A stretch of 64,000 nt of DNA from Salpingoeca rosetta (lineage: Eukaryota > Protista > Choanoflagellata), in contig JAWQFM010000015.1 in the NCBI GenBank assembly GCA_033442325.1, forward strand, positions 504,318-568,317, in the 5' to 3' direction. The notes below the pieces were generated by a model. That model had not been told where the DNA came from. It ran no database searches and saw only the letters and a program-made list of their open reading frames with translations. Of this stretch, positions 3,601 to 21,731 are shown piece after piece. Both the position numbers and the translations under genes were made by a program. Within the stretch, counting starts at the first letter, position 1. Each line of letters opens with the position of its first letter.

Positions 3601-6129
3601 ACGTGTGTTCGCGCTGTTGAATGATGCAGAACGATCTTACTGGCGAGCACACGTGCATCATGCTCAACCCGCTGGAGACAGCGCGCCTGAACGGCAAGTG
3701 GCTTCGCTCCTACTGGCTCGATTTCCAGCAGCGTTACATGGTCCTCCTTGGCTCTGCCTTCCGCGTAAGTTCTCGTGTTTTGTTTGTGTCAGTGTGAGGG
3801 GGCGGGTAGAACACGTATCTATTGTGTTCATTTGTCACGTGCGTGTTGTGTATATATGTGAATGTTCGCCAACCAACAATGTGCATTCATCAAAGTGTGA
3901 GCGATTGGCAACCTCACCGCGTGTGTTCTCACTTTTCCTTTTCGCTCTCGTTTCGTTTGCACGCATGCGCTTGCTCATGTCATGTCAGCATTTTCCGCCG
4001 GCACTCGGTCTTGGTGTTCTCGAGCCCGTCCCATGTGTTTCCCTGGAAGATGACGAAGAAGAGGAGCAGAAACGTGAGTGACACAGGACAGCATACGCCA
4101 TGCTGTATATGCGCAAGCGTGTGTGCGTGTGCGTGTGTGTAACTATGTACGCGCCTCTGTCTTGTGCTTGTATATGTCTATGGCATGATCGCACCTTTTG
4201 TGTTGGCTGCTTGGTTGTGTCAGCTCTAGCTCACATGCAGCCACTCCCTGATCTGCGTGATGCTATCATCTCAACCCGCGCTCCTCACTACAGATTTGCT
4301 GACAGTCGATGAGCTGATGACGCATTTCACGCCACACGATCTCAAGCGCCTCCAGGCATATGTCAACCAGATGGCGGACTTCCACATCATCCTCGACCTC
4401 GTTCCACGCGGTTCGTGGCTGCGGCGGTGTTGTGATGCGTGTGCGTGTGTCTGTGATTTGGTTGTTTGGTTAGGTTACGTAGTACCTGCCAACCGCCTTT
4501 GTGCCGGTATGATTTGGTCGCACGCACACTTACAGGTGGTCACCTTTGTTATTTGCTCGCTCTCTGTTGTAGCTGCACGATTGTTCTTCACCCAGAAGCT
4601 GCCGGTGCGCATCTCGCCAGCGCAGCAGGCCATCTTGCTTGGCCTGGGTCTCCAACACAAGGTGGGCGACCTTGCAACTTCTGGGTTAATGCTGCTGCTC
4701 TTCTTGCTGTGTGCCGCTCGCTTGCCACGTGCATGTATGCTTGCGTTGTGGTGTATCACCTGAGCCGTTCGCACATTCACACACACACGCACACGCACAG
4801 ACGATTGAGGACCTTGAGAAGGGCATGGGTCTTGGCTCGGCGCAGCTGCTTGGTGAGTAGTTCTTAATCGCACTGTGCGTGTGTTTTGATGGTCATGTTC
4901 GTCGTCCTTGTGTACCGTCGCTCACAGCTGTGTGTGTGTGTGCAACTTTGACCAGGGCTGTTCCGGCGTGCCGTTGAACAAATCAACAAGGCGTTTAGGC
5001 GCCTCCGGGAAAAGCACATTGAGGCACAGCTGCCAAAGACACGGGTGAGTCAGCCTTTGTTGTTGCGCTCTCGATTGTGGTGTCTTGTTTGCTTCCTTGC
5101 ATGGCTCGTGCTCCCATGACAACAGCGTCTTGCGGATTTGGTGCTAAAATTCACTTCACGCTCATCGTTTTGTGTACAAATACCGCACGCACGCGCGCGC
5201 ACACACACACACACACGCATGCAGCTTGAGTTTGCTGGCGAGGCTGTTGAGGAGAACCTTGAAGAGCAGCTGGAGGAGGCTGGTCGCGAGGAGATGAAGA
5301 AGCTGGAGGAGGAAGAGCACACCGAACAAGTCGACCAGGAGCGAAGAGAGCTGTACGTGTGTGTGCGTGAATGCGTGCTCAAAGGCTTATTTTGTTTTGT
5401 CGTGCTTGGAACAGAATCGAAGCTCATGCTGTTGTTGCATTTTTCCTTGCTTCTCTCACGTCGGCTCACTTGATGACGCAACAGGCTGCTGCAAACGTTC
5501 TCCAAGTACTCGATTGACGTGGATGATGAGACGTTCGAGAAGGTATATGCTTTGTGTGTGTGTGTGTGTGTGTGTGTGGTCATCAAGTACGCAGACTGAA
5601 CAGGCTTGCTCGTGTCCGGCGTGATTAAGCACGAATATCTCACGTGCGTGTGTTTGCTGTGTTCGCATGTTCGATCCATCTCTCTCTTCGCTTTGATGCA
5701 GGCTGTGAGTGGCAAGACCGAAGTCAGTCGCGTCAGCATTCCAAGGAAGCAGGAACTCAAGCCCGCGGTACGTTTGCATGGGTCTGCAAAGTCACGCGTG
5801 CTTCCGCACACTCGCACGCCCCTTTATCCTTGCCGTATTCCGACACATGTGTGTTGTTGATTCTCATTCTCCATCTCTCATTGTCACACTCACACTCGCC
5901 CACACACTTGCTCACGCGACCACTGATACAGGGAGAGGACGATGGCGCGAAGAGGCGCGCTGACGACGATGCTGACGAGTTTGACATGAAGGGGAAAAAG
6001 GCGAAGAAGGGCAAGAAGTCGAACAAGAGCACACCGAGCAAGAAGGGCAAGAAGGGAACACCGAGCAAGAAGGACAAGGGCACGCCTGGGAAGAAGAAGA
6101 AGGGCGGAAAGAAGGGCGGGCGGCAGTAG
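115..6129 (+). CDS. NAT10: RNA cytidine acetyltransferase NAT10/Kre33, multi-exon, 5' part outside the window
   Basis: Spliced exons give VIDEAAAIPLPLVKDLMGPYIVFMASTING|YEGTGRSLSLKLIQQLR, YAANDPVEAWLNGLLCLD, LYVASHYR|NTPNDLQLLSDAPAH, GDLIPW, GARIVRIATHP|DYQGMGYG and LDYLGVSYGATPSLYKFWKKCGFAPFYMRQT, all hallmark Kre33/NAT10 helicase and GNAT motifs. Lys-rich tail; TAG at 6127-6129. Confidence 0.96.
614..704 (+). ncRNA. Intronic box C/D snoRNA, snR39/SNORD32/SNORD51-like guide to 28S rRNA
   Basis: Perfect terminal stem CGGGGA(614-619)/TCCCCG(699-704), C-like box GTGATGC 621-627, D box CTGA 695-698. The guide TTCACCATCTATCGG is antisense (1 mismatch) to the conserved LSU sequence CCGAAAGAUGGUGAA. 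Confidence 0.85.
1213..1304 (+). ncRNA. Intronic box C/D snoRNA with an 18S-antisense D' guide
   Basis: Terminal stem TTGAGGTGC/GTACCTCAA, C box ATGATGA 1223-1229, D' CTGA 1260-1263, C' TTGATGA 1271-1277, D CTGA 1292-1295. D' guide TACTTAGACATGCA is antisense to conserved 18S UGCAUGUCUAAGUA. Confidence 0.9.
2881..2982 (+). ncRNA. Probable intronic box C/D snoRNA (target unassigned)
   Basis: C-like box TTGATGA 2888-2894, D box CTGA 2973-2976, short closing stem GTGG/CCAC and internal hairpin CACTTG..CAAGTG. About 100 nt, in a NAT10 intron. Confidence 0.5.
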
Positions 6130-6369: not shown

Positions 6370-6383
6370 TTTTCCCGCCAAAA
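6370..6383. promoter_or_regulatory. E2F-type binding site TTTTCCCGCCAAAA
   Basis: Exact match to the E2F consensus (TTTCCCGC, reverse strand TTTTGGCGGGAAAA), about 250 bp upstream of the ATG at 6632. Confidence 0.6.
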
Positions 6384-6631
6384 CGCCACTCACCCCTGCT
6401 TTGGCCTGCACACCAGCCCCCAGCATTCATTGTCTCAGTGGCTTACTTCCTTCCCCCTCTCCCTTCCCTTCTGTCACTGACCTTGTGTTCAACTCCCTCA
6501 CCCCTTCTAACCCTTCCATCACTTCACCACCTGCACCCGTTGTGAGGGTGCCATCCTCCCTCATCCCTCCTCCCTCGTTCCCGGTACCAGGGTACCTTCC
6601 GTTTCCTCGTTCCACACAGACACACATCACC

Positions 6632-9012
6632 ATGCAGCGCGTTCGCACGGTGCAGGCTGAGATGAGCCGCCTGCAGCACCAACACCACCAACACCACCAT
6701 GACAGCAAAACACTCTCCGCATATGACCTCAACCATGGCCTGAAACAGCTGCAGCGGCACCGCAAGCAGCTTGAGACCAAACTCAGCTCTGCCGAGGAGC
6801 AGGTCAAACACCTCACCGACACCATCGCAACCATTGAAAAGTCCAGGCGTTCCTTGCAAGTGAGTTTCTGGCGCTGCGCACGATTGCTACCGCTGCTGTC
6901 GTGTTGTGCAGTGAGCAAGGAAGTCATGCCCATACCGTTGCATTTGCAAACATCGCCATTGCTTTGCACTGTCACGCAACACCATGACGTTGTCCACTCT
7001 CATCGTCCCTGGTTACCTCTGTTTATTCGTATCTCACAGCGCCAGAATGACAAGTTGGATGCCGACCTGCGAATGCGAGAGAGCGAATTGGAGACCTTTG
7101 CTCGAAAGGTGAGATACCTGCGTGCACTGCTGCATGAATGTATCTGTGTTGCTAGTGCACTTGCGAGAACTTCCACGGGTTGAACCCGTGGAATCAAGTC
7201 ATCGACAGAGCCAGAGCCTTCTCCTGCTGTTCTTGGCACCGTTTCACATGCATGTACGCTCACCTCTCACTCCAACACCCGCCTTGCCCCACGCCATGCA
7301 TGTGTCACGCTTGCAGTTTGACTTTGTCAAGACGCACACTCATATGGCTGTCGCCACGAGCGAGGATTGCCGCAAGCTCTTCGACACGCTGTCAGCCTTC
7401 AAGGCTGACATGGAAACCACCATTCAGCAACAGGACGATGAGCTGGATGAAGTTCGCGCCAGCTATAAAGCGCTTGCAGGTGTGATGGCTCAGTTGTTTG
7501 CTTGCACTGTTTGGCCCTCTTCTTTGACAAGAGGGGCATTGCTGGGCTTCGTGGTAAGGGGAACATCCCACCGGGGCCAGCCTAGTTGCGAAGGTTGCTG
7601 GGTGTTGTGCCCTTGCTGCTTTTTTGCCGCCAGTGTTGTGCTGTTGCTGCTCGCCAACTTGCCCGCCGCTGCTTCGAGACCCGCGAGATGTTTGGTGTCG
7701 ACCGACTCACCCGTGTGCTCTGGGTTATTCGTTCACTTGCTTGCAGAATCCAAGCAGGAACTGACGGCTGCCAAGGCGACCCTCATGGCGCGCGTGGAGG
7801 AGCTTGAGCAAGCCTTGCAGGCGCAGAAGAAGACGCTGAATGAAGCGCTGCTCGCCAAGCAGCGGGAGGTTGAGGCCTTGGATCAGCGTCTCGCAAACAC
7901 CAACACTCAGCTCACCAACACCAAAGGTAACACAGAGCAACTCTGCCATTGTCTGTGAAGACAGCCTTGGGGTTGATGTGCAACAGCATGCCAGGAGGGA
8001 GACAGGGGCCGAGAGCCCCATGGTGATGTACCTTCTCTGTCGCCATTCGCCATGCCAGCTTACCATCATGTGTTCAATTGGAATCATCCTCGGCATGTAC
8101 CTCACAACACACACATACACACACATTCACACATTCACACTTACACACTCTTACACACACACTCACACACACTCCCTCTCTTTGTCTCGACTTGTTCGCG
8201 ACTCCCTTCTTGGACAGAGGAGCTGCAGGCTTGGAAATACAAACATGACAAGGCCACGAGCGACATTGAGGGCCTGAAGAGCCGCCTTGAAGCGACTCAA
8301 ACTCAACTCAGTGACTCACGTGACGAATCCCAGCAGCTACAAGCGAAGCTTGCCAAAGCCAAAGGTGCGCCGCTTTGATATTGACTCTGCTGTGTCCAGT
8401 CGTCTGTTGGTACAGTCTTTCCTCACAGGATCTGACGTTAGTCTTTTCCCCCTGCCGCTCTGCTTCTTGCATGCATCCGCTCTTCACGCTATCTCGCCCT
8501 GGTTCTGGGTTGCATACGCCACCACCCTCCTTTCCATCTGTACATGCAACGAATTACAGAGGAGCATGCAAAGGAGCTGGAAGCCGCTCGGCAAGCAAAA
8601 GACGCTGCCGAGGCTGACCTGAATGCCCAGCTGGGTACGGCTCAGGCCAGCCTACAGGCCAGCAACGACGAGCTGGCCAAGCTGAAAGCGCACTGGTCTG
8701 CCAACGCCAGCGCCTGGACAGCACAGGCACAGGATCACGCCCTCGCCTTGGACGCTCTCAGCGTCGTCATCCAGCAGCAAGACCGCAACCTGCTGCAGTC
8801 TCGTAAGCAGCATCACGATGCAACTGCCACCATCACTTCACTGCAAGGTCGGTACCCCTGCCTGTGCAAGGTGTAGTGTGGGCGGGCTTCTCAGCGAAAG
8901 TGGTCCGCAAGCCTTGAGTCTTCCCTTTCGAGCCTCACAGCATGACCGCGGCTGTCTCTCACCATACACACACATGCACACGCACACACACACACATGCA
9001 CACAACACCACA

Positions 9013-9045
<33 letters not shown>

Positions 9046-9885
9046 CACACAACACCACACCACACACACACACACAAACACACACACATACTCTCTCGCG
9101 CTGCGAAATGTGAAGATGTGTTGGGCAAGGCCAAAGGCAACGTGGAAGAGCTCACGGCGGCACTCAAGCAAGCAACCGACGAAGGCGCAAAGCTTCAAAA
9201 AGCGGTCAGCGAGAAGGACACGCTCATCACTGCAAACCATGAGCGCATCGCGGCGCTGGAACAGCAGGTGCTCGCAATGCAAGGTACGTACACGACCGTG
9301 GTTGAGGCCTGGTGCCGGTCTAGCCTTGACACAGTTGCATTCACACAGCTGCATTCACACGCGCACACTCAGTTGTATCCACACGCGCACACGCAGTTGT
9401 ATCCACACACACACCAGATAGACAGACAGACAGACAGAGAGACGCACACACTCACACAGAGAGACGCACACAAAGGAACGAGTCACAACTTACCACCCTT
9501 TCCTTGTGCAACTGGCGTGACAGAGGAAAAGGCAAAGCACGCCAAGGCAATGGAGGAATCAGTCACACAGGCACAGCAGGAGTGCCGTGATTTGGAGAAC
9601 AGGCTCAAGGAGATTGAGGCCACCTTCAAAGAAGCAACTGAGGTCAGGGGCATATGTTGCGGGGCAAGGGAATTGGCTGCTAAGGGGTGACAGGGAGGAT
9701 GGAGAGAGGGTCAGCAAAGTTGTGCTGAGGAGAATCACCCGACACTCGCACCTACACATGCGGCAAGCGTGATCCACTCGTTCACATGAAACCACCCACA
9801 CCCACCCACACCCACCCACCCACCCACCCACCGACCCACCGACCCACACACACACCCACCCACCCACCGACCCACCGACCCACAC

Positions 9886-9975
<90 letters not shown>

Positions 9976-10472
9976 CCCACTTCCGGTAGGAACTGTCGGC
10001 CAAGCTGAAGGTGCAGACGGAAGCGAGCACTGCGCTGGAGAAGCAGGTGCAGGAGAAGGAGGCCAAGCTGGCAGAGGTGGAGAGCACGCTCGCTGCCACA
10101 CAAGAGGCACGCGACAAAGGTAAAGCCGGTCAGGACGAGCTGCAGGCCACTGTTGCCAAGCTGCAAGCAGAGCTTCTGGAGGCCAAGGCCATCAAGGAGC
10201 AAGATGCCATGTGGAAGGACAAGGCTGAGGACTTTGAGGCGCAGTGTACAGCTCTACAGGCGGAGGTGAAGCGAGTGACGGAAGCAAAGGAGGTCGCTGC
10301 GCGCAAGATGGGCTCCGTCCTCGACAAGCATGCGGTGTGTAAAACAAGGAGGAGGAGAGAAAGGGAGACAGCTTGCGTGTGTGTGTGTGTATGAACACGT
10401 GTGCTGCTGCGCAATGACGGTGGGCATGAGAGGGTCAGGGAAGAACTCCCTTCGACACCTACCTTGTCCCAT

Positions 10473-10571
<99 letters not shown>

Positions 10572-10957
10572 GCACATAGCTGGAAGCCAAGCGTGCCAAG
10601 GAAGACCTTGCGAAGGAGAAGCAGATCGTGGCTACACTGAAGAAAGAGCTCGAGGAAGCTGTTGCCAAAGCCAGCAAGTTTGAACTCATGGCTGAAGCGG
10701 CAGACAAAGCAGTACCGCCCGCAGCTTCGCCCAGCACCACTTCTCGTGCCACTGCGCACACACCTCGCACACCTTGCACCCCACGCACGCCCCTCGCTCC
10801 CCACACACCGCGTGCCAAAACCAAACGCCAGCCCGTCTCCCCAGACTCGCCTCCAAGCTCTGCGTCCGACAGCGAAGCCAAGGTAACAAGACATGGACCC
10901 CCGTGCAAAAGTAACGAGAACAACACATGTCCCCCAACACCAAAACACACACACACA

Positions 10958-11008
<51 letters not shown>

Positions 11009-11390
11009 GCACAACACACACACACACACGCATACACTCACTGTTGCGATGCATGCGCTGGATGCTGCCCAAACAGGATGATGTGGCAGTGGAGCCACCG
11101 AAGCCACGGTCGACTCCAAGCACAGTTGCGCCGAGTTTCCCCGTGCCAGCGCGGAAGAAGGTCAGCAAAACCCCGCGCGCGAGCCAGCAGCAAACGCGTC
11201 GCAAGGCTGCTGCAACCCCCAAGACGCCAAGTACGCCACGGACGCGCAAGCGCACCACCACATCAACACCGAAAGCGCCCGTTGCCGCCACGCCAAAGCC
11301 AACCAGCACACCGCGCGGCAAACGCACCTCCGCAACGCCCAAGCTCGCCTCCAAGGCGCCCAAACGACGCACCAAGGTAAGCCAGCCGCT

Positions 11391-11434
<44 letters not shown>

Positions 11435-11772
11435 CACATGATATGGAGGGTGGAGTGGGTCTAATCACAAACCAAGACAGAAGCCCATGCAAGGGTGAAC
11501 ACACCAACACAAGGGTGGCGGAAAAGGAATCAAGAATGTTTGTAACTCACGCAATGATGGTGCATGCTTGTTTGCAATGCACATGGAATGGACAGGATGT
11601 GGCACGAGTGCAAGAGGCGGACGAGTATGCTTTTGCAGATGCAGAGAAGACGCCATCGGCGTCGAGGTTCTCACGGCACCGCAGCCGCCGCGCCATCGCC
11701 CCAGCGCTTCCGCGCAAGGAGCAGCAGCAGCAGTGGGACTTCATGTTTGGCTTTGCGCCATCGTCTCCATGA
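6632..11772 (+). CDS. ~830-aa coiled-coil protein with basic S/T-P-rich C-terminal tail (about 12 exons); candidate SYCP1/Zip1/ZYP1-like transverse filament
   Basis: In-frame GT-AG exons encode continuous heptad-rich helix (LKQLQRHRKQLETKLSSAEEQVKHL ... ATLKKELEEAVAK). This is followed by ~220 aa rich in K/R/T/P (about ten TP[KR]), a DEYAF motif at 11620-11634, and ...WDFMFGFAPSSP*. Confidence 0.8.
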
Positions 11773-11776
11773 TCTG

Positions 11777-21731
<9,955 letters not shown>

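What the first reader, a model, noticed from the sequence alone, without database searches (positions are those of the whole stretch)
6632..11772. Candidate synaptonemal-complex transverse filament (SYCP1/Zip1/ZYP1-like)
Seen: ~830 aa with a short N-terminus, about 570 aa of coiled coil, a ~220-aa basic tail with about ten TP[KR] sites, and an acidic-aromatic motif ADEYAFAD near the end. Known: transverse filaments have this size and layout, diverge too fast for BLAST, and plant ZYP1 ends in a similar DPYAFD motif (from recall). An exact E2F site lies upstream. Inference: a hitherto unrecognised meiotic SC protein in a unicellular relative of animals. Alternatives are a kinetochore, centrosome or nuclear-lamina coiled-coil protein.
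Basis: inference. Interest (0 to 1): 0.7.

Follow-up and report, generated by a model that had tools for sequence, protein, structure and literature searches.

The report
Orphan chromosome-linker-like coiled-coil gene
A choanoflagellate gene really does encode an 828-residue rod-shaped protein with a DNA-binding-type tail, and it shares a rare promoter element with the meiotic genes DMC1 and SPO11, so it is a testable but unproven candidate for the protein that zips paired chromosomes together in meiosis.

Summary
A 12-exon gene (6632-11772, +) encodes about 828 aa: a conserved N-terminal zipper, a proline-free heptad rod to residue 614 and a 216-aa tail (pI 11.7, ten TP[KR]). The tail ends in ADEYAFAD, F.R.RSRR and QQQWD.MFGFAPSSP.

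No exon matches Pfam SCP-1 (SYCP1) or any other family above cut-off. INCENP and Mad1 lie elsewhere in the genome.

Only three fragmentary relatives turned up, all from uncultured marine organisms. The N-terminal exon is 71-74% identical, the mid-rod 39% and the last exon about 53%, and intron positions are shared.

The upstream "E2F site" is a 14-nt palindrome, TTTTCCCGCCAAAA. It occurs 22 times in the 55-Mb genome against 0 for the control, and a relative has an identical 16-mer before its ATG. The same 14-mer lies about 490 bp upstream of the DMC1 start. The 12-mer form lies by SPO11, but the degenerate 12-mer class also lies by PCNA, RPA1, a kinesin and a TOG gene.

The transverse-filament reading therefore stays open at about 0.3; I rank it the best single named role, but it is not demonstrated.

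The parts
6370..6383 (.). E2F-type palindrome TTTTCCCGCCAAAA, about 250 bp upstream of the ATG
   Evidence: The 12-mer class occurs once in the window against 0.00 expected. Genome-wide it occurs 155 times against 12 for the control, and the exact 14-mer 22 times against 0. An identical 16-mer lies 110 bp upstream of the ortholog's ATG in L010.
6632..6859 (+). Exon 1 (aa 1-76): conserved N-terminal leucine-zipper-like head with a variable His/Gln tract
   Evidence: It is 74% and 71% identical in P0004 and P0005, with the same donor after ...LQ. Database matches are generic coiled coils only.
7040..7108 (+). Exon 2 (aa 77-99), part of the conserved N-terminal block
   Evidence: Splice logic. 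The ortholog exon in L010, about 1665-1728, has the same donor.
7317..7479 (+). Exon 3 (acceptor uncertain, 7317 or 7365)
7747..7926 (+). Exon 4, rod
8218..8364 (+). Exon 5, rod.
8560..8847 (+). Exon 6, rod
9116..9283 (+). Exon 7, rod (acceptor uncertain, 9116 or 9137)
9524..9642 (+). Exon 8, rod
9990..10334 (+). Exon 9 (aa 455-569), rod. Its last 33 residues (10236-10334) begin the conserved rod-end block AQC.AL.AEVKRVT.AK.VA.RKM..VLDKHA.
   Evidence: It is 39% identical to P0001 over 113 aa without indels, has the same donor, and its end is nearly invariant.
10580..10882 (+). Exon 10 (aa 570-670): end of the rod (conserved LE..R.KE.L.K.KQ.V) and start of the TP[KR] tail from about 10715
11077..11376 (+). 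Exon 11 (aa 671-770): basic TP[KR]-rich tail with NLS-like RRTK and RKRT
   Evidence: It is fused with exon 10 in the relative L001.
11596..11772 (+). Exon 12 (aa 771-828 plus stop): ADEYAFAD (11617-11640), F.R.RSRR (11668-11691), RKE.QQQWD.MFGFAPSSP (11713-11769)
   Evidence: 30 invariant positions against the L001 ortholog. It is single-copy in its own genome, with no Pfam, PDB or Atlas match.

Best explanation
This is a real single-copy gene of Salpingoeca rosetta for an orphan, fast-evolving rod protein.

Shown:
- a strongly conserved N-terminal zipper of about 100 aa;
- a heptad coiled coil of about 580 aa whose middle diverges quickly;
- a conserved block at the C-terminal end of the rod;
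- a very basic TP[KR] tail;
- a conserved C-terminal peptide with an acidic-aromatic motif, an arginine cluster and a terminal W..MFGF;
- a conserved high-affinity E2F palindrome in the promoter, shared with DMC1 and SPO11.

Inferred: the protein forms parallel coiled-coil dimers that are anchored on DNA or chromatin through the basic tail. TP phosphorylation tunes the binding, and the R.RSRR cluster is a possible nucleosome acidic-patch anchor. The conserved N-terminal ends meet a partner or each other. The most likely single named role is the transverse filament of the synaptonemal complex: C-termini on the chromosome axes, N-termini head-to-head in the middle, and the gene switched on by E2F together with the recombination genes at pre-meiotic S phase.
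For: - Architecture and numbers. The rod is 582 aa, which from my own recall is close to the roughly 570 aa of the Zip1 coil.
- Conservation is uneven: N-terminal exon 71-74%, mid-rod 39% with a nearly invariant end, last exon about 53% with 30 invariant residues.
- It is an orphan. An exhaustive phmmer search of 1.84 billion representatives with exon 9 found one relative only. No Pfam family reaches cut-off for any exon.
- INCENP and Mad1 are encoded elsewhere.
- The E2F palindrome is 13-fold enriched in the genome. The exact 14-mer occurs 22 times against 0 and is conserved with 16 identical bases in the AT-rich ortholog promoter.
- The same 14-mer lies about 490 bp upstream of the DMC1 ATG. 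The 12-mer lies in the region upstream of SPO11.
- The literature places recognisable SYCP1 in Metazoa only and finds only chance-level hits in choanoflagellates (PMC5803294; PMC4132317; bioRxiv 10.64898/2026.01.18.699972). S. rosetta is sexual and has a putative HOP1 (PMC12678776), so a transverse filament is still missing there.
Against: - There is no sequence similarity to SYCP1 or to any known transverse filament.
- A rod plus a basic tail also describes spindle, lamina and kinetochore proteins.
- The E2F palindrome class also sits next to PCNA, RPA1, a kinesin motor and a TOG-domain gene, so it marks proliferation genes in general, not meiosis alone.
- None of the TP sites has the full CDK consensus [ST]P.[KR].
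- Two 2023 runs of unknown library type hold 0.44-0.46 of the locus words, about the exon share. If these are RNA, the gene is well expressed in ordinary cultures, which would speak against a meiosis-specific role. This could not be checked.
- No synaptonemal complex has been described in a choanoflagellate in any paper I found.
Confidence: 0.3

Rival explanations
1. It is a mitotic chromosome-associated linker, such as a kinetochore or centromere protein, a cohesin regulator or a chromosome-scaffold protein. It would be made in S/G2 under E2F control, bind chromatin through the basic tail and arginine cluster, and recruit a partner through the N-terminal zipper. The terminal FGF could be a Pds5-type contact like the FGF motif of Sororin and Wapl.
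For: The E2F palindrome class lies next to PCNA and RPA1. The tail has a basic NLS-like region, [KR][KR].[ST] sites and an FGF at the C-terminus. Sororin-type proteins are defined by a K/R-rich stretch, a linker and a short C-terminal motif, and they use FGF to bind Pds5 (PMC11148194). Kinetochore and cohesion factors also evolve fast.
Against: No exon matches Sororin, Shugoshin, CENP or any other such Pfam family, and none was found in the genome for Sororin_middle. The order of motifs differs from Sororin. There is no KEN box and no clear degron.
Confidence: 0.2
2. It is a spindle or centrosome-associated coiled-coil MAP of the HMMR, NuMA or TPX2 type. The basic TP-rich tail would bind microtubules under phospho-control, and the conserved N-terminus would bind a motor or kinase.
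For: E2F palindromes also flank a kinesin motor gene with a kinesin-14-type microtubule-binding region and an XMAP215/CLASP TOG gene. Basic S/TP-rich tails are common in MAPs (general knowledge). Weak sub-threshold coiled-coil hits to GAS, HMMR_N and CEP63 appear for the relative.
Against: All those hits are far below cut-off and are typical coiled-coil noise. There is no SxIP, no motor-adaptor motif and no PACT, GRIP or TACC domain. The tail resembles S/TPKK-type DNA-binding repeats at least as much as a MAP tail.
Confidence: 0.2
3. It is a nuclear lamina or nuclear matrix rod protein, a functional analogue of lamins or of plant NMCP/CRWN. The rods would assemble under the envelope, the tail would bind chromatin, and TP phosphorylation next to the rod end would drive mitotic disassembly.
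For: It has a long rod, phospho-acceptor sites starting right after the rod, NLS-like basic clusters and conserved short C-terminal motifs. Only a weak, sub-threshold lamin-tail match was found elsewhere in the genome.
Against: It has no CaaX box (the protein ends ...APSSP), no Ig-like tail domain, no Filament match and no phospho-sites in the head. A structural housekeeping protein would be expected to have more than three detectable relatives.
Confidence: 0.12
4. It is a cytoplasmic or ciliary coiled-coil protein unrelated to chromosomes, and the E2F site serves the neighbouring NAT10 3' region or is incidental.
For: Choanoflagellates have many flagellar and collar coiled-coil proteins. P0001 carries a precomputed weak CCDC39 hit.
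Against: The CCDC39 hit was not reproduced among the best 25 families. The pI 11.7 tail with NLS-like clusters argues for a nuclear protein. The palindrome is conserved immediately upstream of the ortholog's ATG.
Confidence: 0.08

Closest known systems
SYCP1 (metazoan transverse filament; Pfam SCP-1 PF05483; 83-aa CM1 motif)
   Same: The overall size is similar. Both have a long central coiled coil and a basic C-terminal tail with S/TP motifs, and the strongest conservation is at the N-terminal start of the coil (CM1 in SYCP1, PMC5803294). The predicted orientation is the same: tail on chromatin, heads in the middle.
   Different: No exon matches the SCP-1 profile even at E<=10, and none is found in the genome. 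No SYCP1 chain appears among PDB matches. The non-helical N-terminus is about 30 aa rather than about 100. Any relation is analogy at best; membership was not met.
Zip1 / ZYP1 / C(3)G (non-homologous transverse filaments of yeast, plants and flies)
   Same: They are lineage-restricted, fast-evolving rods of 490-650 coiled-coil residues with basic C-termini (general knowledge; PMC4132317). This protein has the same layout and is likewise an orphan.
   Different: No sequence relation was tested or expected. Those proteins are defined by localisation and mutant phenotype, which are unknown here. The recalled ZYP1 'DPYAFD' motif was not verified.
Sororin / Wapl FGF-motif cohesin regulators
   Same: Both have a very basic S/TP-rich region, a K/R cluster followed by a short conserved C-terminal motif, and an FGF tripeptide (PMC11148194).
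   Different: Sororin is short and has no rod, and its FGF lies upstream of the K/R cluster rather than at the extreme C-terminus. There was no Sororin_middle match.
Plant NMCP/CRWN and lamins (nuclear lamina rods)
   Same: Both have a short head, a long rod, and a tail with an NLS and phospho-sites.
   Different: There is no CaaX box, no Ig-fold tail and no Filament or LTD match.
E2F-bound promoters of mammalian meiotic genes
   Same: A TCCCGC-core E2F site sits in front of meiotic genes here: DMC1, SPO11 and this gene. That mouse meiotic promoters are silenced through E2F6 is from my own recall.
   Different: In S. rosetta the same palindrome class also flanks PCNA, RPA1, a kinesin and a TOG gene, and it is unknown which E2F binds.

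Membership tests
SYCP1 (Pfam SCP-1, PF05483) | Significant match to the SCP-1 profile | tested here: not met
   hmmscan of all 12 exons at E<=10 shows no SCP-1 row. The six-frame search of the genome with PF05483 gave 0 matches. That search is exon-wise, so its sensitivity is limited. The joined model was not searched.
SYCP1 (Pfam SCP-1, PF05483) | Conserved 83-aa CM1 motif at the N-terminal end of the coiled coil (PMC5803294) | tested here: inconclusive
   A conserved block of about 100 aa exists at the equivalent place. Its profile finds no SYCP1 chain in PDB sequences at E<=10. That the PDB holds the SYCP1 N-terminal fragment is from my own recall. No CM1 alignment was available for a direct comparison.
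Transverse filament (functional class: Zip1, ZYP1, C(3)G, SYP-1, SYCP1) | Long central coiled coil between short non-helical ends, of a length able to span half the SC | tested here: met
   Residues 31-612 are proline-free and their heptad score has z = 12.
Transverse filament (functional class: Zip1, ZYP1, C(3)G, SYP-1, SYCP1) | Basic C-terminal domain with S/TP-type DNA-binding motifs | tested here: met
   The tail is 216 aa with pI 11.65, net charge +29, 19 [ST]P and ten TP[KR]. The composition is conserved in L001.
Transverse filament (functional class: Zip1, ZYP1, C(3)G, SYP-1, SYCP1) | Expression in meiotic prophase | not testable with these tools
Only indirect evidence exists: an E2F palindrome shared with DMC1 and SPO11.
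Transverse filament (functional class: Zip1, ZYP1, C(3)G, SYP-1, SYCP1) | Localisation between paired axes and a requirement for synapsis | not testable with these tools
   This needs cytology and a knockout.
INCENP | C-terminal IN-box (PF03941) | tested here: not met
   Exon 12 has no IN-box match. A clear IN-box exon lies on contig C26 (E 2.8e-9).
Mad1 | C-terminal Mad1 domain (PF05557, end of the profile) | tested here: not met
   Exon 9 gives only a 13.7-bit coiled-coil match. The true Mad1 C-terminal exon lies on contig C3 (E 1.9e-33).
Sororin | Sororin domain or Sororin_middle profile, and an FGF motif | tested here: inconclusive
   FGF is present at residues 821-823. There is no Pfam match in the tail or in the genome (where the control was silent too).
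Lamin / intermediate filament | Filament rod profile, Ig-like tail (LTD), CaaX | tested here: not met
   No S. rosetta exon shows Filament or LTD among the listed matches. The relative P0001 gives only a sub-threshold 16-bit Filament match. The protein ends ...APSSP.
E2F target genes | High-affinity palindromic E2F site near the start, conserved in relatives and enriched in the genome | tested here: met

The most novel reading that the evidence does not exclude
Choanoflagellates build their synaptonemal complex with their own, non-SYCP1 transverse filament, which is this protein. It would be co-regulated with DMC1 and SPO11 through a TTTTCCCGCCAAAA E2F palindrome. That would mean SYCP1 arose, or replaced an older filament, on the animal stem, and that E2F control of meiotic genes predates animals.
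Probability: 0.3. Interest if true: 0.75.

Novelty: new variant of a known kind. Interest (0 to 1): 0.5.

Why it matters
Recognisable SYCP1-type synaptonemal complex proteins are reported only from animals (PMC5803294; bioRxiv 10.64898/2026.01.18.699972). Nobody knows what holds homologs together in their closest unicellular relatives, which do mate and recombine. S. rosetta has inducible mating; that it is also genetically tractable is from my own knowledge, and I read no paper on it here. A short candidate list is therefore directly testable. Whatever the protein's role, the conserved 14-nt E2F palindrome shared with DMC1 and SPO11 gives a handle on how a relative of animals wires its chromosome-biology genes. 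If the protein proves to be a mitotic or lamina factor, it is still a lineage-specific chromosome or spindle component with sharply defined interaction motifs.

Tried and rejected
- **Rfam on the window:** nothing.
- **Pfam on every exon and on the relatives:** only sub-threshold coiled-coil noise. Examples are STX6_N at 27 bits against a 29.4 cut-off, Mei4 and MAD. The precomputed CCDC39 hit was not reproduced among the best 25 families.
- **PDB sequence searches with profiles of exon 1, exon 9 and exon 12:** only a His-tagged GCN4 artefact, apolipoprotein and designed proteins, or nothing.
- **ESM Atlas on exon 12 and exon 1:** nothing, or generic myosin tail.
- **Word searches:**
  - The C-terminal profile found only the L001 peptide.
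  - The same motif scored within a 285-aa stop-free frame, to admit candidates of 157-499 aa, found nothing.
  - Exon 1 found two relatives.
- **Two metagenome scans with back-translated motifs:** no confirmed locus.
- **Own-genome family searches:** SCP-1 none; Cor1 (SYCP3) only a 17-bit chance hit; Sororin none.
- **INCENP and Mad1 readings:** rejected because both genes lie elsewhere.
- **A meiosis-only regulon for the palindrome:** rejected. The variants next to PCNA, RPA1, kinesin and TOG show a general proliferation set. The 13 further CCCGCC 12-mer loci showed no recognisable DNA genes.
- **Joined 828-aa model:** built only inside scripts for composition and heptad counts and sent to no search.
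- **S. rosetta's own annotated protein:** never returned by any search.
Full report
**Organism and setting.** The window is G000:C15:504318-568317. The locus lies downstream of a gene whose last exon ends in a lysine-rich tail at 6129. On the other side the locus is convergent with another coiled-coil gene on the minus strand.

**Gene model.** Three-frame translation shows a chain of open, alanine/glutamine/leucine/glutamate/lysine-rich pieces on the + strand, separated by (CA)n-rich introns.
- Requiring GT..AG, frame continuity and no stops gives 12 exons: 6632-6859, 7040-7108, 7317-7479, 7747-7926, 8218-8364, 8560-8847, 9116-9283, 9524-9642, 9990-10334, 10580-10882, 11077-11376 and 11596-11772.
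- That is 2487 nt, or 828 aa plus a stop.
- The acceptors of exon 3 and exon 7 are uncertain, so up to 16 residues could change.
- I built the joined protein only inside scripts, for counts. I did not send it to any database, so the joined search step was left out.

- There is no proline in residues 1-614.
- The heptad score of residues 31-612 is 12 sd above shuffles.
- The tail (613-828) has pI 11.65, net charge +29, 19 [ST]P and exactly ten TP[KR]; none has the full [ST]P.[KR] form.
- ADEYAFAD is residues 778-785.
- TTTCCCGC lies at 6371.

**Relatives.** An exhaustive phmmer search of 1.84 billion representatives with exon 9 found one true relative, P0001, at 39% identity over 113 aa without indels.
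- P0001 lies on a 2-kb Tara Oceans contig (L001) that also carries the rod end, the tail and the last exon. In L001 exons 10 and 11 are fused.
- A word search with exon 1 found P0004 (Tara, L012) and P0005 (two SRA assemblies, L010 and L011), at 74% and 71% identity.
- Splice donors after exons 1, 2 and 9 are at the same codons.
- L010 has a lysine-rich ORF end upstream, as in the window.
- These are therefore orthologs from uncultured relatives. That they are choanoflagellates is an inference.
- Nothing else was found, and there is no paralog in the genome.
- The length filter of the word search and the apparent withholding of the genome's own records limit what absence means.

**Conservation pattern.**
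- The N-terminal block (exons 1-2) is nearly invariant apart from a His/Gln tract.
- The mid-rod diverges, but its last 33 residues and the first 30 or so of exon 10 are conserved.
- The tail keeps its composition but not its sequence, and its length varies.
- The last exon keeps D.Y.F.D, KTP, F.R.RSRR and RKE.QQQWD.MFGFAPSSP up to the stop.
- This is the signature of a spacer rod with specific contacts at both ends.

**Family tests.**
- No exon, and no relative, reaches any Pfam cut-off. SCP-1 does not appear even at E<=10.
- PDB-sequence and Atlas searches give only generic coiled coils.
- INCENP (IN-box on C26) and Mad1 (C3) are encoded elsewhere.
- Cor1/SYCP3 and SCP-1 were not detected in the genome exon-wise.
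- A HORMA exon exists, and a paper lists a putative S. rosetta HOP1 (PMC12678776).

**Promoter.**
- The 12-mer class TTTSSCGSSAAA occurs once in the window against 0.00 expected.
- Genome-wide it occurs 155 times against 12 for the reversed control.
- The exact 14-mer occurs 22 times against 0.
- In the AT-rich ortholog locus L010 the identical 16-mer, TTTTCCCGCCAAAACG, lies 110 bp before the ATG. This is a clear phylogenetic footprint.
- The same 14-mer lies about 490 bp upstream of the start codon of the DMC1 gene. The gene was identified by its best PDB matches and its N-terminal exons.
- TTTCCCGCCAAA lies upstream of SPO11.
- Sampling 48 further palindrome loci gave these neighbouring genes:
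  - by the 14-mers, a family-A DNA polymerase;
  - by CGCGCC and GGCGCC variants, PCNA, RPA1, Mei5/Sfr1, a kinesin motor and a TOG-domain gene;
  - by 13 other CCCGCC 12-mers, nothing recognisably chromosomal.
- The element therefore marks a general replication, recombination and spindle set that includes the meiotic recombination genes. It is not a meiosis-only set.

**Interpretation.**
- Shown: an E2F-marked, orphan, single-copy rod protein with conserved ends and a DNA-binding-type tail.
- Inferred: a nuclear, chromatin-anchored coiled-coil linker.
- The transverse-filament role fits the layout, the orphan status, the conserved coil ends and the shared palindrome with DMC1 and SPO11. It also fills a real gap, because recognisable SYCP1 is confined to animals (PMC5803294; PMC4132317; bioRxiv 10.64898/2026.01.18.699972).
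- The layout and the E2F link fit mitotic chromosome, spindle or lamina proteins almost as well.
- A hint from word shares (0.44-0.46 in two runs of unknown type) could mean solid expression in ordinary cultures.
- My estimates are: transverse filament about 0.3; mitotic chromatin, kinetochore or cohesion factor 0.2; spindle or centrosome MAP 0.2; lamina-type rod 0.12; other 0.08; the rest is unassigned.

**Verdict.** The candidate is sharpened by the conserved end motifs and by the conserved E2F palindrome shared with DMC1 and SPO11, and it is directly testable in S. rosetta.

Noticed in passing
The ortholog contig L010 has a similar K-rich ORF end upstream of its copy, so gene order seems conserved between the two species.
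   Followed up: partly
window 11788-13243 (-): Another multi-exon coiled-coil gene lies convergent with this one. Its exon peptides include ELEAKVARLEEKVAQLQEDL and NSNLQTRLDNEVTTREALEYEISELK. It was not analysed.
   Followed up: no
G000, 155 sites; e.g. C11:703365-703378, C2:1525487-1525498: The palindromic E2F element TTTSSCGSSAAA is 13-fold enriched over its reversed control. It lies by DMC1 (about -490 from the ATG), SPO11, PCNA, RPA1, Mei5/Sfr1, a family-A DNA polymerase, a kinesin and a TOG gene. This could define the S. rosetta E2F regulon.
   Followed up: partly
G000:C3:22214-22504 and C3:2793019-2793309 (both -): The Mad1 C-terminal exon matches twice with identical scores, near the two ends of contig C3. 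This could be a duplicated contig end or an assembly artefact.
   Followed up: no
window 6674-6700 (aa 15-23): A His/Gln tract (QHQHHQHHH) in the otherwise invariant N-terminal exon is poly-Q in one relative and absent in the other.
   Followed up: yes
window introns, e.g. 8930-9080, 9790-9980, 10470-10575: The introns of this gene are packed with (CA)n/(TG)n microsatellites. One of them (8098-8147) tripped the read tool's filter.
   Followed up: no
window 6400-6630: A strongly C-rich, pyrimidine-biased 230 bp (GC skew about -0.4) lies between the E2F palindrome and the ATG, presumably the 5' UTR or core promoter.
   Followed up: no
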